Below, piece by piece: positions 235 to 58,094 of a stretch of DNA of 64,000 nt. Each line of letters opens with the position of its first letter. The first letter of the stretch is position 1. The DNA is from Octopus sinensis. Taxonomy: Eukaryota. A model generated the notes under the pieces. That model saw only the letters and a list, made by a program, of their open reading frames with translations, did not search any database and was not told the DNA's origin. Both the position numbers and the translations under genes were made by a program. The stretch lies in NCBI RefSeq assembly GCF_006345805.1, contig NC_043021.1, positions 5,332,001 through 5,396,000 on the forward strand. The letters are read 5' to 3'.

Positions 235-260
235 GCACACACACACACACACACACACAG

Positions 261-294
<34 letters not shown>

Positions 295-549: not shown

Positions 550-583
<34 letters not shown>

Positions 584-605
584 ACACACACACACACACA
601 CACCA

Positions 606-665
<60 letters not shown>

Positions 666-695
666 CACACACACACAACACACACACACACACAT
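235..695. repeat. Compound (CA)n/(CAGA)n microsatellite
   Basis: Visible in sequence; source of the spurious CV/HT ORFs at 172-866. Confidence 0.97.
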
Positions 696-3699: not shown

Positions 3700-3925
3700 T
3701 TCTTTATTGCCCACAAGGGGCTAAACACAGAGTGGACAAACAAGGACAGACAAACGGATTAAGTCGATTACATCGACCTCAGTGCGCAACTGGTTCTTAA
3801 TTTATCGACCCCGAAAGGATGAAAGGCAAAGTCGACCTCGGCGGAATTTTAACTCAGAACGTAAAGACAGACGAAATACCAAGCATTTCGCTCGGTGTGC
3901 TAACATTTCTGCCAGCTTACCGCCT
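3700..3925 (-). mobile_element. SINE family B
   Basis: Reverse complement of GGCGAGCTGGCAGAAACGTTAGCAC...GAGTTCAAATTCCGCCGAGGTCGAC...AAAGAAATA family. Confidence 0.85.
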
Positions 3926-4294
3926 TCTTACTTACTACACCAAACACTAAGTCTGTTTCATGGAAACTGGATCGATAAATTGTGGAGATTCTTGTTACTT
4001 CGATTGATAAACCTGAGTGAACTTCTAAACAACAATCTGTACGTTGTTGTTGAAAGTGGATTTGCTGAAGTACTTTGAAGCTAAAGTACTTCAAGCTAAC
4101 AAAGAATCCTTAGCTTGACATATTAAAAATAGTAGCCAAACCTTCCTCATATCAAATGTTATTGTGTTAAAAGTAAGGAGACAGTAAATAACGTAAACCT
4201 AAAAAATGAAAAAATTTTAAATGCCTTTGGTCATACGTTTACTCAATCAGGGCTAACCTGGGGTTAAATAACAGTAAAGTACATCTTGGTAAGG

Positions 4295-9280: not shown

Positions 9281-9592
9281 GTGGAGGCGCAATGGCCTAG
9301 TGGTTAGGGCAGCGGACTCGCGGTCGTAGGATCGCGGTTTCGATCCCTAGACCGAGCGTTGTGAGTGTTTATTGAGCAAAAACACCTAAAAGCTCCACGA
9401 GGCTCTGGCAGGGGGTGGTGATCCCTGCTGTACTCTTTCACCACAACTTTCTCTCACTCTTTCTTCTGTTGGCCTGCTCGCTTAAGCCAGCGGGGTGGCG
9501 TCATTTGAAGGCTAAAACAATGCGAACGCATTGTGACCAGCGATGTGTAACTACATCTGATAGGCTGGTCGGTCATGGTGATCACGGTGATA
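9281..9592 (+). mobile_element. tRNA(Arg-like)-derived SINE family D
   Basis: GGAGGCGCAATGGCCTAGTGGTTAGGGCAGCGGACTCGCGGTCG...GGTTTCGATCCC with A/B boxes; other copies 46301-46598(-), ~51914-52027(-), ~57480-57621(+). Confidence 0.85.
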
Positions 9593-13620: not shown

Positions 13621-13900
13621 TTATGTATATAGGGTGTGAGAGTTATTTGAGGATATATTTGGTAATTTAATAAAATGACTCTAATTTAGCAAAAAAAACT
13701 AATATATTGTAATAAAAATGTGCACGCATGTTCTTGATAAGATTTTTCTTTGCAAGATTATTCTATGAATATACCTTCAGCTTTAATGATTGCTTCAATG
13801 CAGAACCAGAATTACGGCCATTCTCCACTTGTTTACATTTAAATGGTGGTGCCCCAGCATGGCCACAGCTCAAGAGCTGAAACTGGAAAACAAACATAAA

Positions 13901-14010
13901 CATATCATGTTGAAAGAACCGGTTGTCGTCCGATCACCGAAGTTAAGCAACATTGAGCCTAGTTAGTACTTGGATGGGTGACCGCTTGGGAAACCTAGGT
14001 GCTGTAAGCA
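13901..14010 (+). pseudogene. 5S rRNA-derived sequence (first ~9 nt missing), fused to a SINE-type 3' tail
   Basis: CATATCATGTTGAA...CGTCCGATCACCGAAGTTAAGCAAC...GTTAGTACTTGGATGGGTGACCGCTTGGGAAACCTAGGTGCTGTAAGC matches invertebrate 5S including the internal control region; no oligo-T terminator immediately after it. Confidence 0.88.
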
Positions 14011-17914: not shown

Positions 17915-18325
17915 TTTCTTTACTACCCACAAGGGGCTAAACACAGAGAGGACAAACAAGGACAAACAGATTAAGTCGATTATATTGACCCAGTGCATAA
18001 CTGGTACTTATTTAATCGACCCCGAAAGGATGAAAGGCAAAGTTGACCTTGGTGGAATTTGAACTCAGAACATAAAGACAGACGAAATACCTATTTCTTT
18101 ACTACCCACAAGGGGCTAAACACAGAGAGGACAACAAGGACAGACAAACGGCTTATTAAGTCGATTATATCGACCCCAGTGCATAACTGGTACTTATTTA
18201 ATCGACCCCGAAAGGATGAAAGGCAAAGCCAACCTTGGTGGAATTTGAACTCAGAACGTAGTGGCAGACGAAATACCACTGAGCATTTCACTCAGTGTGC
18301 TAACGTTTCTGCCAGCTCGCCGCCT
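17915..18325 (-). mobile_element. SINE family B head-to-tail dimer
   Basis: Two bodies, one head; junction AAAGAAATA|GGTATTTCGTC on the minus strand. Confidence 0.83.
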
Positions 18326-18906
18326 TTTGTACTTAGTCTAGTAGTTGTTTGTGGTATTTGTATCTATAGTCTACTTGTGGTTTGTTGTTCATATATATTC
18401 AGCTCATTGGCTGAATACATTTGTAGTGGGAGTATTCAATAATCACCCAATGTCCTCATTTGCTAGAATATTACCCACTTCATAAAAAATTCTAACCAGT
18501 CACAAGTTCACCTAGAACTGGCTTCAGCAACAATTCCATCATTTTGGGCCTTTCTCTCTCAGCCTAAATATCAGTATAAATTCAGTACACATTGACTATT
18601 TGACAGAGAGCATTCAGAGACAGCAAAGATGTGACACGGACAGTGAACAGATGTGGATAAGGGCTAATCCGAGCTGACAAAAACCTCAATGAACGATTAG
18701 CAACAACAACATAACAACCAGCAGCTAACTTTTTGACTGCTATTACAATTACACTAAGAACAATAACATTCAAACTCCGTTGACATTTTGTTGTTCATTG
18801 TAATGACAATATTTGTTTTGTGTGTGTGTGGAAAGAATAAAATTTTGTTTATCAAAATTCGCAACAGATTCAGTGATCTTCTTTGTACGTGTTTTTCCTT
18901 CATATA

Positions 18907-19235: not shown

Positions 19236-19509
19236 ATCACAGCTACGATTACAGTTTGTTCATTTTGCATAGCATTTGTATAATCTCTCTCAGCACATGT
19301 ATCTGTGATTTGTTGTGCAACATTCAGCTTGCTAAGTGAATGGGATTCCAGTCACTTATACTTATGCAGAGTCAGTTTGTGGTTCGTTGATCAAATTACA
19401 GCTTTTGGGACTTCAATTTTCTTCAGAAAAACTGTTCATTATTCAATTTGTTTGTTTAGGGAAGCGTTTGCATGCATATTTGTTTGTGTTTCTCTCTCTC
19501 TCCCTCTAA

Positions 19510-19574
19510 TATATATGTGTGTGTGTGTGTGGTGTATATATATATATATATATATATATATGCATGTGTGTGTG

Positions 19575-19614
<40 letters not shown>

Positions 19615-21288
19615 TGTATACACATATATGCATATATATATGCATGTATACACATATATGCATATATATATGCATGTATACATTATATGCATATATATAT
19701 ATGCATGTATACATATATATATATATGCATGTATGCACATATATATATATGCATGTGTGTGTGTGTGTATATATATATATACACATATATATATTACATA
19801 TGTGTGCACACACACATATGTGTGTGTGTGTATATATAACGTCTCTGTCTGTCTGTCTGTCTCACACACACACACACACACACGCACGATTCTTTCCTCT
19901 TGTCTCCATTCACTTGTCTTTCATTCTCTAATAATATCATGTATGCACCATTTCTCCACTGTCTCTATACTCTCCAACCCAAACCTCCTCTCTGAGCATG
20001 TGCCCCTCTGCCCCCCCCCCCCGCATAGTTAAGTGGGGCGTGACAGGAGTAGAGGGTCGGGGTGGGGGTGCGACAGGAGTGGAGGGGTCAGGGTGGGGTG
20101 GGGGTGGAAATTTGTTTGTGAATAGTTTTATGTATGGGTATTATTATATCCCAAACACAGATGGCATACAAGTCATGAGGCTGATGCCATCTGAAAATCG
20201 AGGATCATAAAACCTCGGTGCCTCTGCCATCTCCCTCTTTCATCTTCCATTTTCTTTCCCCGTTTACAGGAAACACGTCCGCCTCCCCACAAAAAAAGGA
20301 CAAACAAAACGGAGTAGAATTGATTGCCTTATCTTTATTTTTTTACCTTTGTATATCTGTGTATGTGTGTGTGTATCCATTAGGTGTATGGGTATGTGCA
20401 TATCTGTGTATGCATATGTGTGTACACATATGCCTGGGTGTGTCTGTATGTGTGCTGCTTATGTATATGTATGCATAAGTGTGTATATGTATGCATAAGT
20501 GTGTATATGTACACTACTTATATGCATGGATACATGTGTATATACATATGTGTGTATATGTAGGCTTCTTATGTATATGTGTGTATGTATGCAAAAGTGT
20601 GTATATGTATGCTGCTTATATGCATGGATGCATGTGTACGTGTGTATATACATATGTGTGTATATGTATACTTCTTATGTATATGTGTGTATGTATGCTG
20701 CTTATGTGTATGTATGCAAAAGTGTGTATATGTATACTGCTTATATGCATGTGTACATGTGTATATACATATGTGTGTATATGTATGCTTCTTATGTATA
20801 TGTGTGTATATGTATGCTTCTTATGTATATGTGTGTATGTATGCTGCTTATGTATATGTATGCAAAAGTGTGTATATGTATACTGCTTATATGCATGGAT
20901 GCATGTGTATGTGTGTATATGTATGCTTCTTATGTATATGTGTGTATGTATGCTGCTTATGTGTATGTATGCAAAAGTGTGTATATGTATACTGCTTATA
21001 TGCATGTGTACATGTGTATATACATATGCTTCTTATGTATATGTGTGTATGTATGCTGCTTATGTGTATGTATGAACGTGTGTGTCCTTGTTTGTATATG
21101 TATGCATTTGTGTGATTCTTATTACATGTATACTTAAATGTGTCTGTGTACAGACAGTTGTGTGTATATGTGTGTATGTGTGTGCATGTGTGTATGCTGG
21201 TATGTGTTCATGTATATGTATGAAATGCAAGAACCAGATTATTCCTTTGCTATTTTGGAAATTTTTACACTACATATGCATGCATGTT

Positions 21289-22713: not shown

Positions 22714-23695
22714 ATCATCATCATCATTTAATGTCCGCTTTCCATACTAGCATGGGTTGGATTTGACTGAGTCTGGCGAACCAGACTCCAATCTGATCTG
22801 GCAGAGTTTCTACAGCTGGATGCCCTTCTTAATGCCAACCACTCCGAGAGTGTAGTGGGTGCTTTTACGTGCCACCGGCACGAGGGCCAGTTTGGTGGTA
22901 CTGGCAACGGTCACACTCAAATGGTGCTTTTCACGTGCCACCTGCACAGGAGCCAGTCCAGTGGCACTGGCGACGACCTCATTCAAATGTTTCACATGCA
23001 CCAGCACAAGTGCTAGTAAGGCGACACGGTAATGATCACACTTGAACGGTGTGCTTAACGTGCCATCGGCATGAAGGCCACCTTGCTGATCAGACAACGA
23101 TCTCACTCGTATGGTACACTTAGCGCTCCACTAGCAATGGATGCCAGTCACCGAATTTGATTTCGACTTCGATTTCATAATATATATACACACACACACA
23201 CACTCCATCTTTGCTTATGTTGATGACTTTTTGTGGAGTGTTTGATGATAGCACATCACTCACGGATGTCAACACCAACTCGAGAGCACAGTATATCTTT
23301 CATTTGTGAGTACGGTCTTAGATCAGCTTCACGATTTTCCAGCCCATGTCTAGGATGTCTTTATGAGTCACAACTTGCATGGGATGGCCATTAGCTATTG
23401 GTTCACAGTGAGTCCATTCATCCTTGACAAGTTTTGTTTTTAGTCCTGCAGAGTGTCCACAACATCCTCCTCACCTGGAAAACCAGGTGAGGGAGCTGAT
23501 TTAGTCACTGGCCACCCCACCACGAAACAGGTAGTACTTTGTTATATGGTACTAATTACACAATTTTTCTGTCCTGACTTGATTACTAATAGAAACAATG
23601 TGGTGCATCATAATAAATAACTTGATGCCCCAGCTGGCCTGAATATTGACTGATCAAGGGTATATAATGCCCAAAGTAACAATATTGGGCTCATG

Positions 23696-24050
23696 TCCTT
23701 TATTCTCTAGAAAAACGCCGCCGCCATGGTGATCTCATTCTTGCTCACAACATCATAAGCGGTAAGTGTAACCTCTCGAAAGAGCTGTTCTTCACTCCTG
23801 CTCCAGAGCGTCGGCTGCGGGGTCACTCCGAAAAGCTCTATCTGCGACGATTTCATCTCAATCAAAGGAGAGGGGCTTTCTCCGTCCGGGTTGTGGATCC
23901 GTGGAATAAGCTGTCGGACGAGATAGTGAAGATGCCGACAACTGCTCGGTTCAAAGTCTCCCTTGACCACAAGTGGCCTGAACTCTTTACCTGAACACCA
24001 CCCTGTACATAACTCCATGTCCCCCTACATGGCCTTGCTTTTTGCTTAAC
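23696..24050 (+). mobile_element. CR1-clade LINE 3' fragment
   Basis: LEKRRRHGDLILAHNIISGKCNLSKELFFTPAPERRLRGHSEKLYLRRFHLNQRRGAFSVRVVDPWNKL. Confidence 0.88.
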
Positions 24051-24975: not shown

Positions 24976-25139
24976 ATAGGGAGAGTTTACGAAAAAAACA
25001 ACAAAATACGAAGACAGGTGGTGTAAAAAAACAAACAGGAATAGAGAAAAGTCTTTTACGTTTCGAGCCTACGCTCTTCTACAGAAAGGGACACAGAAAA
25101 CAAAGAGAGAAAAAAATGTGTGTAGTGGCTAACGATCTA
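24976..25139 (-). mobile_element. Short non-coding element with minimal hammerhead-like motif (family H3)
   Basis: Second copy at 50568-50765(+); minus strand 25092-25051 reads GTCCCTTT-CTGTAGA-A-GAGC-GTAG-GCTC-GAAA-CGTA-AAAGAC. Confidence 0.6.
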
Positions 25140-30660: not shown

Positions 30661-30919
30661 ATAATCCTTATACATGCATCCTAGTGTGTGTATGTCTACA
30701 CATAGATGTTTACGTATTCATATATAACAACTACTTCAGTGTATGTGTGGGTGTGTATGTGTGTGCGTGCTCAGAACATATTTGTAGACAAAATATTTAT
30801 CATGCAGGCATACAGACATAAACAGTATGTCTCTGATTACATGTAACATTGGTGTTCAAAATATTACTACTACACCTGTTGTGTTATCAGAATCAGTTTA
30901 CTCTTTCAATACCAAGGTA

Positions 30920-31070
30920 TATATATTTATATATATATGTGTATATATGAGTGTGTGGTAGATGTTGGCGCCAGCTAGCATATATTTGTGTATATATATG
31001 TATATATATGTATATATATATATGTATATATATATCTATATCTATATATATGTACATATATGTGTATATA

Positions 31071-31125
<55 letters not shown>

Positions 31126-31354
31126 ATATGTATATATGTGTGTGTATATATGTATATATGTGTGTGTGTATATGTATATATGTGTGTGTGTGTATATATA
31201 TATGTATATATACGTGTGTGTATATATATATGTACATATATGTATATATGTGTGTATATATATATATATGTGTATATACGTGTGTATATATATATATGTA
31301 TATATGTGTGTATATATATGTATATATATATATGTATATATATATGTATATATA

Positions 31355-31396
<42 letters not shown>

Positions 31397-31410
31397 TATA
31401 TGTGTATATA

Positions 31411-31454
<44 letters not shown>

Positions 31455-31510
31455 TATATATGTATATATATGTACATATATGCATATATATATATATATA
31501 CATACATAGA
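30920..31510. repeat. (TA)n/(TG)n compound microsatellite
   Basis: Visible in sequence. Confidence 0.97.
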
Positions 31511-32996
31511 CAGATGCACAGATATCACAATATAAAACTGTGCGTGGTGAGATAAGAGAAGTGGAGGATGGTTCCAGTTATCTCACTGGTTAAGGAGGAG
31601 GAAAAGGAGGTTTGGAACCCGAGGAGTGAGGTTTCAATTTCTCTTTAGCTGAGTCATTAATATTTTTCTATCTCTTTGTGTACCAGTGTGTGTGTGTGTG
31701 TGTGTGAGAGAGTTTGTATCTAGTCAGAGAAAAACCTGACTCGTGCAAGCAGCAAGCATGGAAAAGAGGATGTTAAAATGATGGATGATGACGATGATGC
31801 TATATATATATGTGTGTGTGTGAGTGTGTATACATATGTATCTGTTTTTTTTTGTTTTTCTTTTACTTGTTTCAGTCATTAGATAGTAGCCATGCTAAGG
31901 CATCACCTTCAAGAATTTCAGTCAAATGAATCAATCCTACCATTTATTGTTTTAATGCCTGGTACAATTATATTGGTCATTTTTGCCGAACTGCTAAGTT
32001 ACAACCAACCCCGGTTATCAAATGCTTGTGGGAGAGACAAACACAAAAACATGTGCATACACACATACACACACACACATGTATATTTTTATGTATGTGA
32101 TGGGCTTCTTTTCAGTTTCCACCTACAAAATCCACTCACAAGGCTTTGGTCTGCCCCAAGTTATAGTAGAACACACTTGCCCAAGGTGCCATACAGTGGG
32201 ACTGAACCTGGGACCTTGTTGTTGGGAAGCAAGCTTCTTACCACACAGCCTTGCCTGATATAAATATATATGTGTGTGTGAAGATGCATCCCTTGTGGCC
32301 AGAGTGTTGCATTCATGATTGCAAGACTGTGGTTTCATTCAAACTCTTGTGTTGTCTCTGCTCAGTTCATCAACCATTTTACTGAGGCACTGGCTGCTAT
32401 TTTTCATGGCACCTGCACTAGTCAGGTTGCCTTGTATCTCACTAGGCTACAGTGCCCTTCAACTGCAAAGGAAAATAGAGGAGAGAGTGAGTATTTCTTT
32501 ATTCACCATGAGGTTGAGAAAAAGAGGGGATGGTGGCACATAAAAGCACCATCCGAACGTGGCCGATGCCAGCGCCGCCTTCGCTGGCTTCTGTGCCGGT
32601 GGCACGTTAAAAGCTCTAACCAATCATGGCCGATGCCGGACCCCCCTGGCACCTGTGCAGGTGGCACGTAAAAAGCACCCACTACACTCGCAGAGTGGTT
32701 GGCGTTAGGAAGGGCATCCAGCTGTAGAAACTCTGCTAGATCAAACTGGAGCCTGGTGCAGCCCTTGGCTTCCCAGACCCCGGTCGAACCGTCCAACCCA
32801 TGCTAGCGCAGAAAACGGACGTTAAACAATGATGATGAATACAGGGACAGACAAAACAAACGTTGGGGTCAGGGTGTCGAATGAGACGAAACGAATGAAT
32901 AAACAAACAATTAAAATATATACAATTAAATGAGAATGAGTGATTAACAAAAAATGAAGCGGAGGACGCGGTTGACCCCACAAACCACATACTCAC

Positions 32997-35642: not shown

Positions 35643-36247
35643 CCCTTTTAGCATTCACATTATTCTCTCTAACGTAATGCTTGTTGATTCACATTGTTTT
35701 TTTTTATTATTCATGCATTATTTTGTAGCTTTGAGATTTTGATGAATTTTAAAATGATGCTGGGTTGGTGTGAGAAGCCAGATCCGGCTAGTTTGAACAT
35801 ATAAGAAGACACTAGACCTTTATTCTCTAGAAAAACGCCGCCGCCGTGGTGATCTCGTTCTCGCTCACAACATCATAAGCGGAAAGTGTAACCTCTCGAA
35901 AGAGCTGTTCTTCACTCCTGCTCCAGAGCGTCGGCTGCGGGGTCACTCCGAAAAGCTCTATCTGCGACGATTTCATCTCAATCAAAGGAGAGGGGCTTTC
36001 TCTGTCCGGGTTGCGGATCCGTGGAATAAGCTGCCGGACGAGATAGTGAAGATGCCGACGACCGCTCGGTTCAAAGTCTCTCTTGACTAGAAATGGCCTG
36101 AACTCTTTGCATGAACACCCTCCCTGTACATAACTCCATGCCCCCTACATGGCCTTGCTTTTTGCTTTTTGAGCCAAAAAATTAACTTAACTTAACTTAT
36201 ATAACTTGTAGTGTTTTGGCTGAATATAGCTGGTTACTGCTAAAGGT
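35643..36247. mobile_element. piggyBac-like MITE interrupted by a CR1 3' fragment (~35805-36200, +)
   Basis: TTAA|CCCTTTTAGCATT ... TGCTAAAGGT|TTAA enclosing the CR1 LEKRRRRGDL...WNKLPDE fragment with (TTAAC)n tail. Confidence 0.75.
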
Positions 36248-46300: not shown

Positions 46301-46598
46301 GATCACGTGATCGACCAGACCATCAGATGTTGTTACACATCGCTGGTCACAATGCGTTCGCATTGTTTTTTAGCCTTTGAATGACGCCACCCCGCTGGCT
46401 AAGCGAGCGGGCCAACAGAAGAAAGAGTGGTGAAAGAGTACAGCAGGGATCACCCCCACCCCTGCCGGAGCGTCGTGGAGCTTTTTTTTTTAGGTGTTTT
46501 CGCTCAATAAACACTCACAACGCCTAGTCTGGGAATCGAAACCGCGATCCTACGACCGCGAGTCCGCTGCCCTAACCACTGGGCCATTGCGCCTCCAC
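46301..46598 (-). mobile_element. SINE family D with 12-bp TSD
   Basis: GTTTCATTATGT at 46289-46300 and 46599-46610. Confidence 0.9.
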
Positions 46599-47456
46599 GT
46601 TTCATTATGTACTGGGTTTAAATTTTGCCGAGGCCAGATGCAAAACAAAATACAATTTAAATATGATTCAAATACTAAAAAAAAAAAAAAAAATAGTACA
46701 GCAGAAATATATTCATAAAATAAATTCATGTCATATCGATAAAATGTCTTTATATTTCCTACTGTTGTTACGTAGTCCCCAAGTCTGCCCTGAGAAATAT
46801 CTGAACTATTAGGAAAGACAATCTAACCTTTATCGAGGTCGATAAAATAAAGTACCGGTCAAGTACTGGAATTGTTGCTTTGGAAAGCAGAATGGGCCCT
46901 TGTATTTGAAGTACGCAAATAAAAAGGAAAAAACCCATAAATATTGTAAAATATTTATTTATTTATTGCGATGCTCTGTCTTAACGCTGCTCCGTGTGAA
47001 GAGCCCTTTCTAAAAATTTTTAATTATAATTTTGCGGCGAAGGAACTTTTAACCGTTTTGTGAACTCAAACCACAGATAAAGAATATATCTAAGGGAGAC
47101 AACCAGTGAATATCTCACCGAATATCATACACAGTTATCGTTCTTAGGCACGAATAATTTCATCGTTTTGCATTTAAAAAAAATATTGTTTATGTTTAAA
47201 AGGCATTGTGCTGGTCGTTTTTGTACGCTACCCGCCCACCCCCACTTGTCCCATGGCGGTGAGATTGGTGCTATTACCATTCCTTTTGACGACTGCAAGA
47301 AGACATATTTAGGGTGTGACTTCTAGACGTTCTGAGGGATGGATAGAACATGGGTGATGAGAAGATGAGAAAAGAAGGATCGGGTGAGCGGAGGGGGACT
47401 ACAGTTCAGGTAGAAACAAGCACTCGTGCCTTCTACTATATATTGCCTCGGGAAAG

Positions 47457-47688
47457 GCGGCGAGCTGGCAGAAACGTTAGCACGCCGGGCGAAATGCTTA
47501 GCCGTATTTCGTCTGACGTTACGTTCTGAGTTCAAATTCCGCCGAGGTCGACTTTGCCTTTCATCCTTTCGGGGTCGATAAATTAAGTACCAGTTACGCA
47601 CTGGGGTCGATGTAATCGACTAAATCCGTTTGTCTGTCCTTGTTTGTCCCCCCTGTGATTAGCCCCTTGTGGGTAGTAAAGAAATATA
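47457..47688 (+). mobile_element. SINE family B with ~15-bp TSD, inserted in a SINE A relic
   Basis: TATATATTGCCTCGG on both sides. Confidence 0.88.
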
Positions 47689-49509
47689 TATATTGCCTCG
47701 GACTGACCAATGCATTGTAAATTAATTTGATAGGCGGAAACTGTGTGGAATCCCGGCGTGTGTGTATAAGTTTGTCTCCCATCTTCACAACTAACGTATG
47801 ATAGCTACAGGTACCATTCCCGGTCTTTCTAATTCTGGTACAAGGCCTGCAACTTTGAGGGGAAGGGCAAGTCGATTGCAATCGATCGCAGTACTTTACT
47901 TGTACTTTATCGACTTTGAAAGGATGAAAGACAGAGCCTGATCTGGGTGGAATTTAACTGAGAACATAACGAACCAGAAGAAATACTGCAGGGTATTTTG
48001 TCCGACGCTCTTAACGATTCTGCCAGTTCACTACCGTAATAGTAATAATGATAATAAACAAGTAATGTTTCTGCTATAGGCATAAGGCCTGAAATTTCAG
48101 GGGGAGCGGGTAAGCTGATTATATCGACCCCGGTGTTTCACTGGTATTTAATTTATCGACCCCGAAAGGATGAAAGGCAAAATCGACCCCGGCGGAATTT
48201 GAATTCAGAACATAGCAACGGGCGAAATACCGCTAAGAATTCCGTCCAGCGGGCTAAGGATTCTGCCAGCTTAAGAAAAAAGAAAAAAAGAATTCTTTTT
48301 ACTATAGGCGCAAGGCCTGAAATTTTAGGGGATTGGGCCAGTCGATTACATTGACCACAATTCCACTGGTGCTTATTTCATCGACCCCGAAAGAATGAAA
48401 GACAAAATCGACCTCGGCGGAATTTGAACTCAGAACGTAAAGATGGATGAAACCCTGTCTGGTACTTATTTTATCGGTTCCGAAATTATGACATGTACAG
48501 TTGACCTCAAAAAAGGCGGAAGAAATGCCGCAAAATATTTTGTCCCCGACGACCTATCGATTTTGCCTGCTTCTATAAATATCATTCATAATTGTTTTCC
48601 TTCAAATATCCCATCTTTGCGATTGATTGAAAGGATAAGTTTTGGCGTTGGTTTCGACAAATGCGAATTAGAGTTTTTTGGTCAACGAAATTTTTTTTTT
48701 TAGAGTCTTTTTTTACATAGACTCTTGTATATGCACTCTATGGAATCTCCAGGCTGGCAACGATGTTTCAATTCTTCATTGAAAGATAAAATAATAAAAA
48801 TAAGGATTTATAATATGATAACCTATTTGTTTTTCCCTTCTCGTGTCGATAACAGCCGCAATAAATGTCGGTGAATTAGATATAAAATAAAAATATGTAT
48901 TGGTTATTCTAAATCTATCCCGTTTGCTGTGATAAAAATCAATTTATCGGATATATTACATTTAACAGTGCCCGTTCACGCACGCACGCGCATATATGTT
49001 GTGTGTGCGCCTGTTATAATGTATGTGTCTTGTGTGTACGTGTTGTGTCTATGTATATGTGTGTGCGTGCGTTTGTAAATTCAGATTTCGTGTTTAGTTC
49101 CTTTAGAATTCTCTCCCTTGGAATGATACGATTCTTTTACATTGAATTAGTAAATTAGTGTTGACATTTATTGGAGTGACTATCAGAAATCTAATTTAGA
49201 ATATTTGTGCAGTGAAGAGAAGTCTTAATTAGATCAACCAATAATTATTTTTACTGATTTTAGCCATTCGATTGCGGTCATCCTGGAGCACCGTCTCCAA
49301 GGGTTCTAGTCGATATTAATATTGGTCCCAAGAATTTCGTATGTTATTTTAGGTTACATTGTTTTTGTAAGCATACAAAACGCATTGATGTACAAAAGGA
49401 GACAACTCAGTCGGACTTTAATACCGCAGGGTATTTCTGTTCAATTACACCGGGCTGTAACCCGCACTCCTAAACACCTTCGATATATCCATATAATAGG
49501 GTCTCCGAA

Positions 49510-49925
49510 GGCGGCGAGTTGGTGGAAACGTTAGCGCGCCGGGTGAAATGTTTAGCGGTATTTCGTCTGTCGTTACGTTGTGAGTTCAAATTCCGCCGAG
49601 GTCGACTTTGCCTTTCATCTTTTCGAGGTCGATAAATAAAGTACCAGTTACGCACTGGGGTCGATGTAATCGTCTTAATACCTATGTCTGTCCTTGTTTG
49701 TCCCCTCTATGTTTAGCCCCTTGTGGGTAGTAAAGAAATAGGTATTTCGTCTGTCGTTACGTTCTGAGTTCAAATTCCGCCGAGGTCGACTTTGCCTTTC
49801 ATCCTTTCGAGGTCGATAAATAAAGTACCAGTTTTGCACTGGGGGTCGATGTAATCGACTTAATCCCTTTGTCTGTCCTTGTTTGTCCCCTCTATGTTTA
49901 GCCCCTTGTGGGCAGTATAGAAATA
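49510..49925 (+). mobile_element. SINE family B dimer
   Basis: Head+body+body; junction AAAGAAATA|GGTATTTCGTC at ~49740. Confidence 0.86.
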
Positions 49926-50175
49926 TCCATATGACAGGGTCTCCGGATACAGAGCTTAAGGTGACCATTCAGGCAGAGAAGCAAGAACTTGAATGTAGAT
50001 CACTCCGAGTCTTAGAAAAAATCGTTGGGCTTTGACTTAGCACTTTCGAAAATCATGTCCAACTGTCGGTACTATATGTGAAACTCAGAGTAGCAAGAGA
50101 CTGTTCGACCAAAATAAATGAAATATATTAATCACCTTTTCTATCGCGTTCTCTTTCTTCCGACTGTCAACACTA

Positions 50176-50567: not shown

Positions 50568-50760
50568 TAGATCGTTAGCCACTACACACATTTTTACTCT
50601 CCTTTTTTTTGTCTCCTTTTTTCTCCTGTGTCCCTTTCTGCAGAAGAGCGTAGGTTCGAAACGTAAAAGACTTTTTTTATTCCTGAGTGTTATACTAATA
50701 CATCTGTTTGTTTTGTACACCACCTGTCTTCGTCTTTTGTTGTTTTTTTTTGTAAACTCT

Positions 50761-50765
<5 letters not shown>
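50568..50765 (+). mobile_element. Family H3 element, second copy
   Basis: 50630-50671 reads GTCCCTTT-CTGCAGA-A-GAGC-GTAG-GTTC-GAAA-CGTA-AAAGAC; flanked by (TA)n. Confidence 0.6.
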
Positions 50766-50800
<35 letters not shown>

Positions 50801-51035
50801 TTAATAAGGGTGAGAGAATTAGATACTAATTTAATAGTATATCTATTCTACACCAATATTTTATAATATATTATAATATTTTTACAAAATAAATATAAGA
50901 GAGTGGTCACTATATGGCTCACTCTAGCACCAGTTAATCCAATAGGTTTCAACCACAAAAATACATGTTTCCCATGAAAGTCAGTACGATTGTTAGCTCA
51001 CACGGACAGGGCAAATAAAAAATAACAAAAATACA

Positions 51036-51127
51036 GATTATTTTGGGACAATTGTTTCGCTATTAATGAATTGAATGTAATTTTACTTACAAAAAAATCC
51101 ACTTGTAGCTCCTCAGCCAAAACTATC
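51036..51127 (-). ncRNA. Type I hammerhead ribozyme (copy 1)
   Basis: Reverse complement of 51649-51740 with one loop substitution; predicted cleavage between 51047 and 51046. Confidence 0.82.
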
Positions 51128-51648
51128 TGGATGAAATCCACTCAATCACACGCCAGATTTTATCATAACGATAAATACGCGTGTGGTTCAATTGATTACA
51201 TCCGACGTTATAATTCAAATGCCCCAACTAACAGCGCACCAAATTTTCACGGAAAACAAATACAGCATTTAGAAATAAATGCAGCATAATTATAATTAAT
51301 TAATAAGGTGGTGCTAGAGTGAGCCATATAGTGACCACTCTCTTATATTTATTTTGTAAAAATATTATAATATATTATAAAATATTATAATAATCCAGGT
51401 TTCTCGGAGCACTAGGCCACTTGGTGTAGAATAGATATACTATTAAATTAGTATCTAATTCTCTCACCCTTATTAATTAATTATAATTATGCTGCATTTA
51501 TTTCTAAATGCTGTATTTGTTTTCCGTGAAAATTTGGCGCGCTGTTAGTTGGGGCATTTGAATTATAACGTCGGATGTAATCAATTGAACCACACGCGTA
51601 TTTATCGTTATGATAAAATCTGGCGTGTGATTGAGTGGATTTCATCCA

Positions 51649-51740
51649 GATAGTTTTGGCTGAGGAGCTACAAGTGGATTTTTTTGTAAGTAAAATTACA
51701 TTTAATTCATTAATAGCGAAACAATTGTCCCAAAATAATC
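51649..51740 (+). ncRNA. Type I hammerhead ribozyme (copy 2)
   Basis: Stem I GATAGTTTTGG/CCAAAATAATC; core CTGAGGA (51660-66); stem II GCTA/TAGC; GAAA (51718-21); palindromic stem III ACAATTGT; GTC triplet at 51727-29. Confidence 0.85.
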
Positions 51741-52034
51741 TGTATTTTTGTTATTTTTTATTTGCCCTGTCCGTGTGAGCTAACAATCGTACTGACTTTC
51801 ATGGGAAACATGTATTTTTGTGGTTGAAACCTATTGGATTAACTGGTGCTAGAGTGAGCCATATAGTGACCACTCTCTTATATTTATTTTATATATATAT
51901 ATATATATATATCACGTCATGTGACTGACCAGACCATCAGATGTTGTTACACATCGCTAGTCACAATGCGTTCGCATTGTTTTAGCCTTCGAATGATGCC
52001 ACCCCGCTGGCTAAGCGAGCAGGCCAATATATAT

Positions 52035-52086
<52 letters not shown>

Positions 52087-53679
52087 GCAATGGTAAGATC
52101 CAACGATCAAGGTGTAGGAAGTTATTTATATATATATATGCATCATCCTCATCATTTAATGTCTGACTTCCATGTTGGCATCTGCGTATATATGCAAATG
52201 TATTCATATGTGCACATGCACATAACGCACTGACTGCATCAGTGTGCCAACCAGACTATCGGTTGTTGTTATATACTGCTTGCCTCAATGCACTTCCTCG
52301 AATTGTTGTAGCTTTCAGATGATGCCACCCCCCACACCTGGCAGGAAGTCAACATTCCTCTTGAGCAGAAGATGCCAGCCCGTTACAAAGTTCCTCCACT
52401 CCACACATTTACAGCTGAGTGGAGTGGAGGAACTTGGAAGGAAGTGTCATGTTCAAGAACACAACACACTGCTGAGTCTGGGGACCAAAACTACAATCTT
52501 GGCATAATGAGTTTGTCTCCCTAACCACTGGGCCAAGCAGTTTCACTACACACACACACACACACACACACGTATGTCTGTGTGTGTGTGTGTGTGCTGC
52601 ATGCATCATTGTATTTATCAAACTGGGATCATGAAAAACAAAAATAGAGAAATTTTAAATTTTCTCCTAAATAAGGTTGCATTTCTTAATTGTCATCTCT
52701 GACCTTTGACACCTAAGTTAATTGGACAATTAATAAGCTACAGCTTACTTCCATGACCTTCAACACTAACGTTTCATTCGAACTATTCTCCTTGAGCAAG
52801 TTTATTTTCCTTCTTCCTTGTGGCTGTTGAAGCTTTGATGTTCTTACTTTTGATGTATATGGTACAGAAATAGTTACAAAGTTTGAAGTTGTTAATGACC
52901 AGGTCATTCGTATTGGGATTTGAAGACTGAAAGAGGTTCTGAAGTGGTTTCTTGAATGTTAAGAGTGTTAAATGAAGAAATAAATAAATAAATAAAAATA
53001 CTAATGGTGAATGAAATAAAATAAGGAAGGGCAGGAAAGCTATAAATCTGTGGGCATTTGTTGCTGTTTCTGCTCTCAATTGCTACAACCACAACCACTG
53101 CTGCTGCTGCTGGTGTTGTTTTAGCCCAAACTCATCTCTGATCTAGTTTAGCAAACCTATGAACAAAGGTTGGTGAAGTGGCAGAGACAGCTTGAGTGAG
53201 TAGGATTACTCAAAGCAGGTGTCTGCAGTACAGGGGAGTGGGGAGTACTTCCCATAGTACACCTGGTGGGTGGGGTGGCTTAGGATCTGTGGTGCTCTTT
53301 GGTTCACCCTAGGTGGTATTTCCCCTCTGTTGGAGATTTTGTTAAAATCGGGCATGGCTGTGTGGTTAGGGAGCTTGCTTCCTGGCTACATGGTTTCGGG
53401 TTCAGTCCCACTGCGTGGCTCTTTGGGTAGGTGTCTTCCACTATAGCCCCGAGCCGACAGGAGCTTTGTGATTGAATTCGGTAGGTGGAGATTACTGACG
53501 TGTGTGTTTGTGTGCGTATAGCTGCTCAGTGCCTCTCCGAAAGAGAGAGAGAGGGTTTTGCAGACTGATATTCTTTTCTTTTGTTTGCATATTATTATGT
53601 AAACCCTCACTATCCTTTGTCCTATTGTCCTAAATGTTCTCACAACCCTTGTGGTCAATAAAGAAGGAATTATTATTAT

Positions 53680-53895
53680 CGCAGAAACGTTAGCACGCCG
53701 GGCGAAATGCTTTGCAGTATTTCGTCTGCCGCTACGTTCTGAATTCAAATTCCGCCGAGGTCGAGCTTTGCCTTTCATCCTTTTGGGGTCGATTAAATAA
53801 GTACCAGTTACGCACTGGGGTCGATATAATCAACTTAATCCGTTTGTCTGTCCCTGTTTGTCCTCTCTGTGTTTAGCCCCCTGTGGGTAGTAAAG
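53680..53895 (+). mobile_element. SINE family B abutting a (TAA)n run
   Basis: Family B body ending AAAGAAATA then (ATA)n. Confidence 0.85.
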
Positions 53896-53904
53896 AAATA
53901 ATAA

Positions 53905-55865
53905 TAATTATTATTGATTGTGAACACACCCTCCAATAGTCAGAAGGACAGAACATCTGTCTCTCCACAGAAATAGGGTTACTGATCTCCTTCATTCTCC
54001 TTCTCTCTGACAACCATGGCCTTGCTCACAATAGGCAGTGTAAATGCCTGTGGCCTGGCATTGTCTTTGTTTTCTTTCTCAATTAAGACTATGTCCAGCT
54101 TCCTATTCGCAATCTCATGGTTGCACTGAATCATAAAATCCCATAGGATCTTTGCATTTCTATTTTAGACAATGACTTCAGGTTTGAGGTCATACCAATT
54201 TTTTCTCTGTCAAGTTCATACTTGTGGCAAAGTGTCCAAAGGACAAGCCTTGCTATATTGTTGTGGCGTCTCTTATATTCCTTCTGGGCTAGTGGCGTAC
54301 ATTGGCTGGTAATAGGCCAAACAGTTTCACCATTTTGTTCACACATTCTGCACTTATCACCTTCTGAGGTGTTGTCTATTCTGTATTTTATGTAGTTTGT
54401 TCTTAGTGCTTGCTCTTGGGCAGCACACGCTAGGGCCTCCGTTTCTGGTTTTACATCACTTTTAGTCATCTACAGCAATCTTTTTTCTTTGTCTGTCTTA
54501 TCTTCAACATCCCTATGAATTTGACCATGGATACTTTTCTTTACCCACCTATTTTCAATTTCTTGTATAGTGCTTTATCTTTGCAATCTTTCATCCTACA
54601 CACACCTGACCTTCCTACTTCTAATAATAACGGTTCTGTGGCATTTTTTACATACCATACTATGTTGCTTTCTTCTGTTCTAATGCTGTGTTCACATCCA
54701 ATAAGTCCTCTTCCCTGTCTTTTTCTTGGTACATACAGTCTATCTGTGTCACTTTTTGGGTGGGATGTCCCATAGCAACTTCCTTGTCTTTCTGTCTAAG
54801 CTGTTTACCATAAAGTTTGAGGTCATCTATGAATAGCAAATGGTTGACTTTTTGTTGGTGGCTTTTGAATACATACCCAGCTTTTGCTTTCCTCAGAATC
54901 AGTGTCAGTGGTATCAAGCACAGTACAAAGATCAGTGGGGACAGGCAGTCCCCATGGAAGATGCCCCTCCTAATTTCTACTGTCCCTAAACTTCCGTATG
55001 CTGTCAGGTTCATCTTCCAATTTGCCATACTTTTTCCAAGCAATTGCTCAACATTCGATGCAGTACCAAATAGGTTCATACATTCCATAATCCAAGAATG
55101 TGGGATCCTTTCGTACACGTTACGATACTCAATCCATGACATGGCTAAGTTACTTTTCCTCCTCTTGCAGTCTCTGAGTACAGTTTTGTCTATCAGGAGT
55201 TGATCCTTGGTACCTCTGCACTTATGCTTGCAACCCTTCTGCTCATGTGGCAGGACTCCATTTTTTCCAGATGTTCGTACATTGACTCTGCAACTATTCC
55301 AGTCAATAACTTCCACATAAGTGGCAAACAAGATATTGGCCTGTAATTGTCTACCGTATTGTGTTTTTCAATGTTTTTCAGGCACAGCACTGTCCTACCC
55401 AATGTCAATCACTCTGGTGTTACTTGGTTGGCATTTAACAAGGTGTTGAGTTGCACAGCTATTCGTGCATGACATTCACCAAATCTTTTGATCCAGTAGC
55501 CTTGAACTCCATCGGGTCCAGAGGCCTTCCAGTTGCTCATTTTTTTGCTGATTTCCTTAACTTCCCTCACCGAAATGACTAGTTCTGCCTCTTTTGGACA
55601 GACTACTGTTTGTTTCAGTTCTTGCAACCATTCAGCATCCTTCTTATTCTCCTTGTCTTTTCTCCAGATGTCACTCCAAAGCCTTTGACTTCCAATGTCA
55701 TTTGCTATCAACTTTTCATCTGTACACTCTCCATCTATTTCTTTATAGAATCCCTTCTGAGCTATTCTGAATAACCTATTCTGGTGGTAACCCACCATTG
55801 TTTGGTCGTATCTTACCATCTTTGCTTTCTTTGCAACGAGGTGCTGTTTCAGTTCCACCACAGTT
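53905..55865 (-). mobile_element. R4/Dong-clade non-LTR retrotransposon, decayed and internally deleted (RT, zinc knuckle, restriction-like endonuclease)
   Basis: KASGPDGVQGYW; [17 protein letters not shown]; DQLLIDK...SWIEY...IPHSWI; [15 protein letters not shown]; [12 protein letters not shown]; AAQEQALRTN...KCRMC...KRRHN; ILWDF.IQ..RKLDIV; many stops and frameshifts. Confidence 0.85.
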
Positions 55866-56100: not shown

Positions 56101-58094
56101 GCATCTTGTTACTAAGGTTATGGTTGTAATTGTTGTTACTGTCTGCTTTAGTTTCTGTGTCCAGTACCTATTGTTGCTTTAAATTCTTTTATTCATTTTA
56201 CTGGTTTCAGTCATAGGACTGTGGCCATGTTGGAGCACCTGGTACATATTTCTTTTTTTTTTTATAGATTGGAATCTGTCAGAATGCAGTTATTTGTTTT
56301 ATCTAGTTTTTTTTTCTGGCTTGTTTTTATTGTTTTCATTTTAGTTTTTTTTTCTTTTCTTTGAGATAAACCAGAAAACCTGGCATATATAAGACAAATA
56401 GTTTTGACAATTCTTCATTCAGCTTCCATTCAGGATCTCTCACCTCCCTCTATCCACCTCCTGCCCTCTCTCCCCCCTTCTCCTCTCCTTCCCATCTCCC
56501 TTTCTTCCTCCCTCTTTCCCTGTTCTCTATTCTTTTACCTTTTAACTCGAAGTTTCCGCTTCCCTTCCTCCCTCTTTGTTATTATTCCCTCTCCTCCCCT
56601 TGGCCAACTTTCTTATATTTCCATCTATCTCTCCTCATTTCCCTTCTATTCATTCTCTCTTCACCCCTCATCTCTTTCTCTTCTGTATCTCCTCTTCCCC
56701 TCTCTTCTTTCTATCGTTTCACGCTCTCCCTCTTCTTCTCTTCTTCTTCCTCCTCACATCTCTGCAGATAAATTGGTGTAAAATAAATCAAGGGGTAGGA
56801 CAAAATCAGTTATTCAGTATGATGGATTAAATGCTTTGGGTTGAACAAAATCTGAGAACAAAGGTTTGAAAACTTTCATGAGAACTTCAGACATCTCATA
56901 CAACTGTTTTTGGACACCTGTAAAAAATTGGAAAAGTCAAGAAAACAGATAGGTTTGTTACACATCAACTGAACATCATCATCATCATCATCGTTTAACG
57001 TCCGTTTTCTATGCTAGCATGGGTTGGACGATTTTGACTGAGGGCTGGCGAACCAGATGGCTGCGCCAGGCCCAGTTTGATCTGGCAGTGTTTCTACGGC
57101 TGGATGCCCTTCCTAATGCCAACCACTCCGAGAGTGTAGTGGGTGCTTTTTACATGCCACCTGCACAGGTGCCAGACGAGGCTGGCAAACGGCCACGATC
57201 GGATGGTGCTTTTTACGTGCCACCGGCACGGGGGCCAGACGGGGCTGTTAATGGCCACAATCGGAGGGTGCTTTTTACATGCCACTGGCACGGAGGCCAG
57301 TCGGGGCGGTGCTGGCAATGGCCACGTTCGGATGGTTCCCCTATGTGCCACCGGCACAAAAAATACAGATGCCTCGAAGTATACTCCTTATTGCTTTTTT
57401 GACCGGAAAAAGATCATTTTTGCATCAAATCATTACTTGTGATAAGAAATGGATACTCTTTGACAACAGTTGTACTCTTTTGCCGCAACTTTCTCTCACT
57501 CTTTCTTCTGTTGACCTGCTTGCTCAGCCAGCGGAGCGGCGTCATTTGAAGGCTAAAACAATGCGAAGCGCATTGTGACCAGCGATGTGTAGCAACATCT
57601 GATAGCCTGGTCAGTCACGTGATATATATATATATATATATATATGCACATACACACACATGATGGGCTCTCCTACACAGTTTCTGTGTACGAAATCTAT
57701 TCACAAAGCATTGATCGGCCCAGGGTTATAATAGAAGGCACTTGCCTAAAATGACATGCAGAGGACTGAACCTGAGACCATTTGGTTGTAAAGTGAGTTT
57801 CTTAACCACACAGTTATGTTTTTACAGAACTACAACCTGTTGCCCACATCTAAAGAATTCGGGCAGTTGCTCTTTCTCCCATTGAGTGGTTAAGGACTTG
57901 GAGCATATTAGCCTGTGTCATATCTGTTGGCTGCTGATACACTACTAATTAGACTTAGGTCCTCCTCACATGTTGTTAAATGCCTAAAGTAGCAAGCTTC
58001 CTCCAGCATGGCCAGTCTGCTGTATCTTTCTCCACTCTTGTCCAATATGGGTCATCATGCATTTAACCCCGGGGCTGTATGTATTTTTTTTTTT

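What the first reader, a model, noticed from the sequence alone, without database searches (positions are those of the whole stretch)
50794..51890. Very young fold-back mobile element built from circularly permuted, hammerhead-containing ~535-bp monomers
Seen: on the ribozyme-sense strand the right half (51309-51890, +) reads B-X-A-C-B, one monomer plus a repeated start (period 535 bp). The left half (51308 down to 50794, -) is the same monomer opened at a different point (C-B-A) and lacking the 36-bp X segment at a TT microhomology. The halves diverge head-to-head, differ by only two substitutions I could find, encode no protein, and sit in a (TA)n tract. Established: Penelope-like element pseudo-LTRs occur in tandem and inverted arrangements with type I hammerheads, and animal non-LTR retrozymes are tandem hammerhead repeats that replicate through circular RNA. 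Inference: two different permutations of one monomer at a single site fit reverse transcription of a circular or multimeric RNA with a template switch. This may be an active, possibly undescribed cephalopod retrozyme/PLE-parasite family.
Basis: partly seen in the sequence, partly recalled or inferred. Interest (0 to 1): 0.88.

Follow-up and report, generated by a model that had tools for sequence, protein, structure and literature searches.

The report
Inverted pair of hammerhead retrozyme copies
Two nearly identical, non-coding ~500-bp repeat copies, each carrying a textbook hammerhead ribozyme, sit head-to-head inside a (TA)n microsatellite in the arrangement left by Penelope-like retrotransposition, so this is a clear example of a known kind of animal mobile element and not a new kind.

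Summary
Window 50792-51890 holds two head-to-head copies of one non-coding unit.

- **Right arm** (51309-51890, +): 582 bp, 535-bp unit plus 47 bp repeated.
- **Left arm** (51308 down to 50792, -): 517 bp, 499-bp unit plus 18 bp repeated. It is opened 159 nt further along the unit and lacks a 36-bp segment (51385-51420).
- **Differences:** two substitutions.
- **Flanks:** both outer ends abut (TA)n.
- **Ribozyme:** each arm has one complete type I hammerhead. These are the only two in 64 kb, where 0.015 are expected by chance. Helix III is 2 bp with a palindromic loop, and two copies cofold into a double hammerhead. Rfam models miss it.

Neither arm can be a DNA copy of the other, so each was copied from a template longer than one unit.

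The best reading is a retrozyme-like non-autonomous element inserted by Penelope-type priming on both strands of an AT-rich break. A circular template is possible but not required.

"Very young" and "active" are not shown. The locus has one ribozyme per strand, so it cannot release unit-length RNA. No other copy was found in the window or in any reachable collection. I file it as a new member of a known kind, of modest interest.

The parts
50764..50795 (.). Left (TA)16 target tract. It is also the 3' tail of the flanking SINE-like repeat 50573-50763.
   Evidence: TRF. A paralogue at 24979-25134 also ends ...AAACTCTCCC(TA)n.
50792..51308 (-). Left arm: 517 bp, the 499-nt variant lacking X, 1.04 units. 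It reads M160-M535, M1-M76, M113-M177. The 5' end is at the centre and the 3' end lies at (TA)n with a 4-nt TATA overlap.
   Evidence: Alignment to the trimerised monomer.
51034..51129 (-). Left-arm type I hammerhead. The core motif spans 51116-51047, with predicted cleavage after C at 51047.
   Evidence: It is identical to the right-arm copy except 51073 C in the helix II hairpin.
51308..51309 (.). Head-to-head junction (AATAAGG|TGGTGC). It has no intervening TA, no palindrome and no microhomology.
51309..51890 (+). Right arm: 582 bp, the 535-nt variant, 1.09 units. It reads M1-M535 then M1-M47. The 5' end is at the centre and the 3' end lies at (TA)n.
   Evidence: Family D5.
51385..51420 (+). 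X: a 36-bp segment present only in the right arm, bounded by TT. It is unique in the window and is predicted to pair with M1-M7.
51647..51742 (+). Right-arm type I hammerhead. Helix I pairs 51647-51659 with 51730-51742. CUGAGGA is at 51660-51666. Helix II is a 51-nt hairpin at 51667-51717. GAAA is at 51718-51721. Helix III is C-AAUU-G. Cleavage falls after C17 at 51729.
   Evidence: MFE -25.0 kcal/mol, z -3.7. Double-hammerhead cofold.
51891..51913 (.). Right (TA)~12 target tract, adjoining the SINE-like repeat 51914-52022.

Best explanation
The locus is one insertion of a short, non-coding, hammerhead-bearing retroelement: an animal 'non-LTR retrozyme', that is, a non-autonomous parasite of Penelope-like elements. 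Proposed mechanism: a PLE-type RT/GIY-YIG complex cut both strands of a (TA)n tract, and each exposed 3'-OH primed reverse transcription at an internal AU-rich site of the element's RNA (M47 for the right arm, M177 for the left). Each cDNA ran a little more than once through the unit, overshooting by 47 nt and 18 nt. The two cDNA heads were then joined at the centre, giving two head-to-head copies opened at different points. The template was longer than one unit, either a multimeric transcript of a tandem master array or a circular monomer copied by rolling circle. In the RNA, the hammerhead processes multimers, most likely as a dimer through the 8-nt palindrome ACAAUUGU that forms an intermolecular helix III. 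In the unit-length RNA, helices I and II bring the two cleavage ends together, which would favour ligation to a circle. Shown: the anatomy, the motif, the folds, and the fact that neither arm can be copied from the other. Inferred: retrotransposition, the PLE machinery, the single event, and the nature of the template. This particular locus is probably a dead-end copy, with one ribozyme per strand. If transcribed through, it would form a ~440-bp double-stranded RNA hairpin.
For: (1) The full type I hammerhead occurs only in the two arms, against 0.015 expected per 64 kb. Its architecture is helix I of 6 Watson-Crick pairs plus a G-U, helix II of 4 bp before an internal loop, and helix III of 2 bp with a palindromic tetraloop. 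This matches the canonical metazoan type I description in PMC4209133. (2) Two 97-nt segments cofold into a double hammerhead at -55.8 kcal/mol, against 2 x -25.0 for separate monomers. (3) The unit-length RNA is strongly self-paired, -151.2 against -110.6 +/- 7.1 kcal/mol for shuffles (z -5.7), and its MFE contains helix I (11 of 13 pairs) and helix II. Retrozyme RNAs are described as highly self-paired (PMC7229834). (4) The unit has 32% GC and no ORF with relatives. (5) Head-to-head copies, short direct redundancy and a (TA)n target are the published PLE insertion hallmarks. Dual hammerheads 100-700 bp apart on opposite strands have been reported near PLEs. (6) A purified PLE protein cleaves and extends both target strands, initiates internally, and uses uncleaved multimeric RNA. 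(7) The right arm has X, which the left lacks. The left arm has a second pass through M48-M177 that the right lacks. So neither arm is a DNA copy of the other. (8) The arms abut with no TA between them, and the flanks are unrelated unique or SINE-like sequence.
Against: Only one locus is available. There is no other copy in 64 kb and none in the metagenome, prokaryote-genome, viral or protein collections, so mobility and family size are unproven. No PLE RT or GIY-YIG coding sequence is in the window: the only RT remnant, 54131-55861 (-), looks LINE-like, and a GIY-YIG regular expression found nothing. No target-site duplication can be read inside (TA)n. The two 3' ends lie 130 nt apart, not the 30-40 nt 'tail' spacing reported for PLEs. 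The unit (499/535 nt) is larger than the 170-400 nt reported for animal retrozymes. Rfam hammerhead models do not score the motif. With two near-identical copies there is no covariation evidence for the ribozyme.
Confidence: 0.6

Rival explanations
1. The same element was mobilised by a LINE-type reverse transcriptase rather than a PLE, and the inversion arose by L1-style twin priming on a multimeric RNA.
For: The only RT remnants seen in the window are LINE-like. The neighbouring SINE-like repeats carry (TA)n tails, so a TA-tailed LINE/SINE system appears to exist in this genome. PMC7229834 leaves LINEs open as retrozyme mobilisers.
Against: Short-helix-III type I hammerheads, partial tandems and head-to-head copies are hallmarks of PLEs. 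Extension from both strands has been shown for a PLE and contrasted with R2 and L1. Classic twin priming joins non-overlapping parts of one RNA, whereas here both arms cover the whole unit.
Confidence: 0.12
2. Two independent insertions of the same family landed in one (TA)n hot spot in opposite orientations.
For: The arms differ by the 36-bp X and have different 3' start points. (TA)n is evidently a preferred landing site, since other repeats here also border (TA)n.
Against: No TA remains between the arms, so the second insertion would have had to hit exactly the 5' edge of the first. The arms are 99.6% identical.
Confidence: 0.1
3. The arms are extremely 5'-truncated copies of an autonomous PLE whose pLTR or 3' region itself contains at least 1.33 tandem units of this sequence. 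On this reading there is no separate non-autonomous family.
For: Most PLE insertions are heavily 5'-truncated and reduced to terminal repeats. A 712-nt linear stretch (M1-M535 plus M1-M177) would suffice to template both arms.
Against: The sequence returns to its start after 535 or 499 nt with no ORF in between. The two 3' ends are 130 nt apart, whereas a PLE has a defined start site plus or minus a 30-40-nt tail.
Confidence: 0.08
4. This is a DNA-level rearrangement: an inverted duplication, followed by deletions, of a pre-existing local tandem satellite that happens to carry a hammerhead.
For: Hammerhead satellites exist in newts, schistosomes and cave crickets (and my own knowledge). Fold-back duplications do occur at AT-rich, hairpin-prone DNA.
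Against: A fold-back copy mirrors its template, but here each arm holds material the other lacks. At least three further events would be needed. The element is confined between two (TA)n tracts with unrelated flanks.
Confidence: 0.06
5. The fold-back is an assembly or read-chimera artefact.
For: PLE-type tandem and inverted structures are known to trouble assemblies. No reads were available.
Against: Read-level fold-back chimeras are exact mirrors running to the end of the read. Here the arms are offset by 159 nt, differ by a 36-bp indel and two substitutions, and are embedded in different flanks on each side.
Confidence: 0.04

Closest known systems
Animal non-LTR retrozymes (Cervera & de la Pena 2020, PMC7229834; Li et al. 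2026 preprint, 10.64898/2026.07.22.740005)
   Same: A non-coding, AT-rich unit carrying one type I hammerhead. The RNA is strongly self-paired. Copies run longer than one unit, which implies a multimeric or circular template. PLEs are the proposed mobilisers.
   Different: The unit is 499/535 nt against the reported 170-400 nt. There is no true tandem array here (1.04 and 1.09 units). The arrangement is inverted head-to-head, which the 2020 paper does not mention (0 occurrences of 'inverted'). Helix II is a 51-nt hairpin, so Rfam models miss the motif. Expression and circles are untested.
Penelope-like element insertions with pseudo-LTRs (PMC8557442, PMC3846280), especially the (TA)n-targeting Hydra, Neptune and Naiad clades
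   Same: A partial tandem redundancy, an inverted 5'-truncated copy abutting the 5' end, a (TA)n target, a hammerhead, and an unreadable target duplication.
   Different: There is no RT/GIY-YIG ORF. The redundancy is only 18 and 47 bp, against pLTRs of hundreds of bp. The two 3' ends are 130 nt apart instead of a 30-40-bp tail.
In vitro mechanism of the Anolis PLE PAc (Frangieh et al. 2024, PMC11167929)
   Same: Both strands of an AT-rich target are cleaved and extended. Reverse transcription starts internally at sites with little or no homology to the target (0-1 nt for the right arm, 4 nt for the left). Uncleaved multi-copy RNA serves as template.
   Different: PAc starts in an AC-rich stem-loop, whereas here both starts lie in AU-only runs just 3' of a CTCTC motif. 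Nothing here was tested biochemically.
Dimer-dependent type I hammerheads of newt satellite 2, axolotl retrozymes and PLE min-HHRs (PMC4209133, PMC7229834)
   Same: A 1-2-bp helix III capped by a palindromic loop, so that two ribozymes form an extended intermolecular helix III. Here that helix is ACAAUUGU, 8 bp.
   Different: Helix II continues past its 4-bp stem into a long imperfect hairpin instead of a small loop 2. The usual loop1-loop2 contacts cannot be recognised.
L1 twin-priming inversions (Ostertag & Kazazian 2001; from my own knowledge)
   Same: Two primers at one break give a head-to-head inverted product.
   Different: Twin priming joins adjacent, non-overlapping parts of one linear RNA. 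Here each arm contains the complete unit.

Membership tests
Hammerhead ribozyme, type I (canonical metazoan form) | Conserved core: C3 U4 G5 A6 N7 G8 A9, G12 A13 A14, the A15.1-U16.1 pair, and H17 at the cleavage site | tested here: met
   CUGAGGA ... GAAA ... GUC| is present in both arms.
Hammerhead ribozyme, type I (canonical metazoan form) | G10.1-C11.1 pair opening a closed helix II of about 4 bp; an open-ended helix I of about 6 bp | tested here: met
   GCUA/UAGC followed by an extended hairpin. Helix I has 7 contiguous pairs, 11 of 13 overall. Both helices form in the unconstrained MFE.
Hammerhead ribozyme, type I (canonical metazoan form) | Short helix III (1-2 bp) with a small palindromic loop that allows a dimeric ribozyme | tested here: met
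   A-C/AAUU/G-U. ACAAUUGU is self-complementary, and the two-copy cofold gives the double hammerhead at -55.8 kcal/mol.
Hammerhead ribozyme, type I (canonical metazoan form) | Score at or above the threshold of a curated Rfam hammerhead model | tested here: not met
   No hammerhead family is reported at the gathering score or at E<=10. The long helix II insertion is the likely cause; that is my inference.
Hammerhead ribozyme, type I (canonical metazoan form) | Compensatory changes in the helices across copies; self-cleavage | not testable with these tools
   Only two copies exist, differing at one position within the helix II hairpin.
Animal non-LTR retrozyme | Head-to-tail tandem repeats (dimers to multimers), each unit with a hammerhead | tested here: not met
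   Each arm is only 1.04 or 1.09 units and holds one hammerhead. The redundancy does show that the template was longer than one unit.
Animal non-LTR retrozyme | Monomer of about 170-400 bp | tested here: not met
   499 and 535 bp.
Animal non-LTR retrozyme | Low GC, non-coding, highly self-paired RNA | tested here: met
   GC 32%. The longest ORF is 72 aa with no relatives. MFE z = -5.7.
Animal non-LTR retrozyme | Many dispersed genomic copies; abundant linear and circular RNAs | not testable with these tools
   There is no other copy in 64 kb. The source genome and its transcriptomes are not in the reachable collections.
Penelope-like element (EN+) insertion | ORF with a telomerase-like RT and a GIY-YIG endonuclease | tested here: not met
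   The element has no ORF and no GIY-YIG pattern occurs in the window. At most it is a non-autonomous dependant.
Penelope-like element (EN+) insertion | Partial tandem (pLTR-like redundancy) plus an inverted 5'-truncated copy abutting the 5' end | tested here: met
   47-bp and 18-bp redundancies and a head-to-head junction at 51308|51309. Definition taken.
Penelope-like element (EN+) insertion | AT-rich or (TA)n target | tested here: met
   (TA)16 and (TA)~12 on the two sides. Such tracts cover 1.9% of the window.
Penelope-like element (EN+) insertion | [quoted passage not shown] | tested here: inconclusive
   A 36-bp segment (X) is present in one arm only, but it is internal: 29 nt beyond the right arm's 3' end position and 65 nt before the left arm's. 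The two 3' ends differ by 130 nt.
Penelope-like element (EN+) insertion | Sequence shared with the pLTR or 3' end of an autonomous PLE of the same genome | not testable with these tools
   No PLE is in the window and there is no access to the genome.
Foldback / MITE-type DNA transposon | Terminal inverted repeats at the element's two ends | tested here: not met
   The outer ends correspond to M177 and M47 of the unit and are not complementary to each other. The inverted repeat is internal and offset by 159 nt.

The most novel reading that the evidence does not exclude
The locus is an in-vivo footprint of circular-RNA-templated retrotransposition. On this reading a dimeric PLE complex primed on both strands of one (TA)n break and copied two separate circular retrozyme RNAs (a 535-nt and a 499-nt variant) once around each. 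It stalled 47 and 18 nt after closing the circle, where it ran into its own cDNA. The family would be a previously unrecognised large-unit retrozyme whose ribozyme escapes the Rfam models. It would also give structural evidence for the PLE-retrozyme link in an invertebrate, which the 2026 preprint says it did not examine.
Probability: 0.2. Interest if true: 0.6.

Novelty: new member of a known kind. Interest (0 to 1): 0.3.

Why it matters
How animal retrozymes are mobilised is still inferred mostly from co-occurrence with Penelope-like elements. This single insertion combines a retrozyme-type unit with the full PLE insertion signature: both strands primed, internal starts, a more-than-unit-length template and a (TA)n target. 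That makes it a natural counterpart to the in-vitro behaviour reported for one vertebrate PLE. If the family is multi-copy, the distribution of its 3' start points and overshoot lengths could separate circular from multimeric templates. The hammerhead here also shows that model-based annotation can miss ribozymes with a long helix II. By itself, however, the locus adds an example and not a new principle.

Tried and rejected
- **Rfam:** the gathering-score scan of the whole window and the E<=10 scan of 50700-52000 gave no hammerhead. The MIR6217 and mir-type hits merely reflect the long hairpin and the TA tract.
- **Relatives:** two hammerhead-anchored DNA patterns against JGI metagenomes and GTDB genomes, and one against IMG/VR, gave 0 hits.
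- **ORF route to other copies:** exact look-ups of the 72-aa and 47-aa ORFs and a homology search of the 72-aa ORF found nothing.
- **Organism identification:** the best relatives of the nearby RT remnant are only about 60% identical, on unnamed ENA contigs that contain no copy of the monomer. The organism stays unverified.
- **Simple snap-back or hairpin cDNA, or a DNA fold-back copy:** rejected, because the arms are offset by 159 nt and each holds sequence the other lacks.
- **Foldback or MITE transposon:** rejected, because the termini are not inverted repeats.
- **X as the PLE 'tail':** the length fits (36 bp) but the position does not. Left as inconclusive.
- **RT stops explained by RNA structure:** the left arm's 5' end lies at the base of a predicted hairpin (M115-M160), but the right arm's does not. 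Not pursued.
- **tRNA-like head:** ARAGORN finds none in the window.
- **PLE coding remnants in the window:** none seen among ORFs or by a GIY-YIG pattern. A full six-frame Pfam scan was not run.

Full report
**What is there**

Window 50792-51890 is a 1.1-kb block made of two copies of one non-coding unit placed head-to-head. I number the unit M1-M535 from 51309.

- The right arm (51309-51890, +) reads M1-M535 then M1-M47. The 47-bp redundancy is 47/47 identical.
- The left arm, read on the - strand from 51308 down to 50792, reads M160-M535, M1-M76, M113-M177.
- The left arm therefore lacks the 36-bp X (M77-M112 = 51385-51420, bounded by TT). Its unit is 499 nt and it has its own 18-bp redundancy (CCTTATTAATTAATTATA, 51291-51308 and 50792-50809).
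- Apart from X, the arms differ at two positions in 517. One is 51238 T against 51538 C, a CpG to TpG change. The other is 51073 C against 51703 T.
- The junction 51308|51309 has no TA, no palindrome and no microhomology.
- The outer ends run into (TA)16 (50764-50795) and about (TA)12 (51891-51913). Such tracts make up 1.9% of the window.
- The longest ORF is 72 aa and has no relatives.

The only adjustments are the left boundary (50792-50796, ambiguous within TA) and the left arm's length (517 bp).

**The ribozyme**

A descriptor requiring the complete hammerhead core, three helices and type I topology finds exactly two hits in 64 kb, one per arm. They lie at + 51660-51729 and - 51116-51047. 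The expectation from first-order Markov simulations of the window is 0.015, and a relaxed descriptor adds nothing.

The motif reads: helix I, CUGAGGA, G-C-opened helix II, GAAA, A-C/AAUU/G-U, then cleavage after C at 51729.

- Helix I has 6 Watson-Crick pairs plus a G-U, then an A-A mismatch and four more pairs.
- Helix II has 4 bp, then a 3x3 internal loop, and continues as a 51-nt imperfect hairpin.
- Helix III is 2 bp with a palindromic tetraloop.

This is the architecture described for canonical metazoan type I hammerheads that work as dimers (PMC4209133; PMC7229834). The 97-nt segment folds to -25.0 kcal/mol with helices I and II in the MFE (z -3.7). Two segments cofold into a double hammerhead with an 8-bp intermolecular helix III (ACAAUUGU) at -55.8 kcal/mol, against -50.0 for two monomers.

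Rfam reports no hammerhead, at the gathering score or at E<=10. I attribute that to the long helix II. With two almost identical copies there is no covariation test, and catalysis is untested.

**The RNA as a whole**

The unit-length RNA, opened at the cleavage site, has an MFE of -151.2 kcal/mol against -110.6 +/- 7.1 for dinucleotide shuffles (z -5.7). In that fold helix I (11 of 13 pairs) and helix II are formed, so the two cleavage ends lie side by side. GC content is 32%. These are properties reported for retrozyme RNAs.

**What the two permutations imply**

- The right arm contains X, which the left lacks.
- The left arm contains a second pass through M48-M177, which the right arm lacks because it ends at M47.

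Neither arm can therefore be a DNA copy of the other, and a simple snap-back product is excluded because the arms are offset by 159 nt. The outer ends (M177 and M47) are not complementary, so this is not a foldback or MITE element.

Both arms read straight across the ribozyme cleavage site, and each is longer than one unit. The templates were therefore uncleaved multimers or religated circles.

The two 3' ends fall in two of the unit's five AT-only runs of at least 10 nt. These are the two runs that directly follow the unit's only two CTCTC motifs, at M30 and M153. Overlap with the TA target is 0-1 nt for the right arm and 4 nt for the left.

**Fit to known mechanisms**

PLE insertions are typically partial tandems with an inverted 5'-truncated copy abutting the 5' end. 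They prefer AT-rich or (TA)n targets, with Hydra-clade PLEs combining canonical hammerheads and (TA)n insertion. They often carry a 30-40-bp tail at one end (PMC8557442, PMC3846280). Hammerhead pairs 100-700 bp apart on opposite strands have been noted around PLEs.

A purified PLE protein cleaves and extends both strands of an AT-rich target, unlike R2 and L1. It starts reverse transcription internally at sites not homologous to the target, and it uses unprocessed multi-copy RNA (PMC11167929).

Priming on both strands of one (TA)n break, with the two cDNA heads joined in the middle, reproduces this locus without any extra template switch. Animal retrozymes are proposed to be non-autonomous PLE derivatives.

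**Circle or multimer**

This is unresolved.

- For a circle: both arms stop shortly after completing one turn (47 and 18 nt). That is what a polymerase meeting its own cDNA on a small circle would do, and there is no defined 3' end.
- Against one shared monomeric circle: the arms differ by X and two substitutions. This needs two templates, or two units of a heterogeneous multimer, or later change. The CpG to TpG difference looks like a change in the DNA, though it could equally have been inherited from a different source copy.
- The PLE data show that a multimer is sufficient.

**What is not supported**

- *Very young.* The 0.4% divergence between inverted arms can be held down by gene conversion, and part of it may come from different templates.
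- *Active.* Each strand has one hammerhead, so no unit-length RNA can be excised from this locus. A read-through transcript would instead fold into a ~440-bp hairpin (-790 kcal/mol for the whole block).
- *A family.* No further copy, even a diverged one, is in the window (blastn and nhmmer). Nothing was retrieved from any collection.
- *PLE in the window.* None was seen. The RT remnant at 54131-55861 (-) has LINE-type motifs. Its closest relatives are about 60% identical, on unnamed contigs.
- *Cephalopod origin.* It could not be verified. Hammerhead_1 hits, Penelope elements and about 24,000 5S-derived loci are reported for the giant squid genome (PMC6962438), which fits the 5S-like sequence at 13892-14010. 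That is only a resemblance.

**Context**

Both flanks are dispersed SINE-like repeats that themselves end in (TA)n. The target tract is therefore the tail-to-tail meeting point of two older retroposons.

**Verdict**

This is a real, well-resolved example of a hammerhead-bearing non-autonomous retroelement inserted in PLE fashion. It is a new member of a known kind, with a larger unit and a longer helix II than usual. Interest is modest (0.3). It would rise if genome-wide copies showed that the start sites and overshoots seen here are the rule.

Noticed in passing
window 50573-50763 (+); paralogue 24979-25134 (-): The left flank is a dispersed SINE-like repeat (75.5% identity to its paralogue). 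It has a B-box-like GGTTCGAAAC and a 3' end ...AAACTCTCCC(TA)n, so the target (TA)n is this repeat's own tail.
   Followed up: partly
window 51914-52022; paralogues 46303-46408 (+), 9474-9575 (-), 57516-57622 (-), 52250-52331: The right flank belongs to a ~106-bp or longer repeat family (89-92% identity). Two of its paralogues are likewise directly bordered by (TA)n. In this copy the repeat is cut off at 52022 by another (TA)n tract (52027-52084).
   Followed up: partly
window M30/M153 = 51338-51342 and 51461-51465 (and the mirrored sites in the left arm): CTCTC occurs only twice in the 535-nt unit. Each occurrence lies just 5' of the AT-only run where one arm's 3' end sits. The left-flank SINE also ends CTCTCCC(TA)n. 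This may be a shared recognition or initiation motif, or it may be chance.
   Followed up: partly
window 13892-14010 (+): A 5S rRNA match at 80.8 bits over the full model length, but the terminal helix does not pair. It is probably a 5S pseudogene or the head of a 5S-derived SINE rather than a working gene.
   Followed up: no
window 54131-55861 (-): A degraded non-LTR (LINE-type) reverse transcriptase split over three reading frames (RVT_1, E 1.3e-09; NYRPISCLP and FIDDLKLY motifs). The best database relatives are about 60% identical.
   Followed up: partly
window 3725-4075, 18047-18439, 47326-47619, 48058-48351, 49678-49968, 53389-53829: The same pseudo-peptide (…YRPRKDERQSRPRRNLNSE…) recurs in stop-free stretches at six or more places, which marks a high-copy dispersed repeat family. 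A second recurring family (…LEKRRRHGDLILAHNIISGKCNL…) at 23680-23991 and 35797-36087 looks like LINE 3' ends.
   Followed up: no
window 51196-51580, both strands: Rfam MIR6217 hits (62 bits, below the gathering score of 110) are produced solely by the long inverted repeat. It is a reminder that hairpin models fire on such fold-backs.
   Followed up: yes
window 172-866, 19284-21207, 30896-31582: Long overlapping 'ORFs' on both strands are artefacts of (CA/TG)n and (TA)n-rich microsatellite blocks. The window holds 60 (TA)>=6 tracts.
   Followed up: yes
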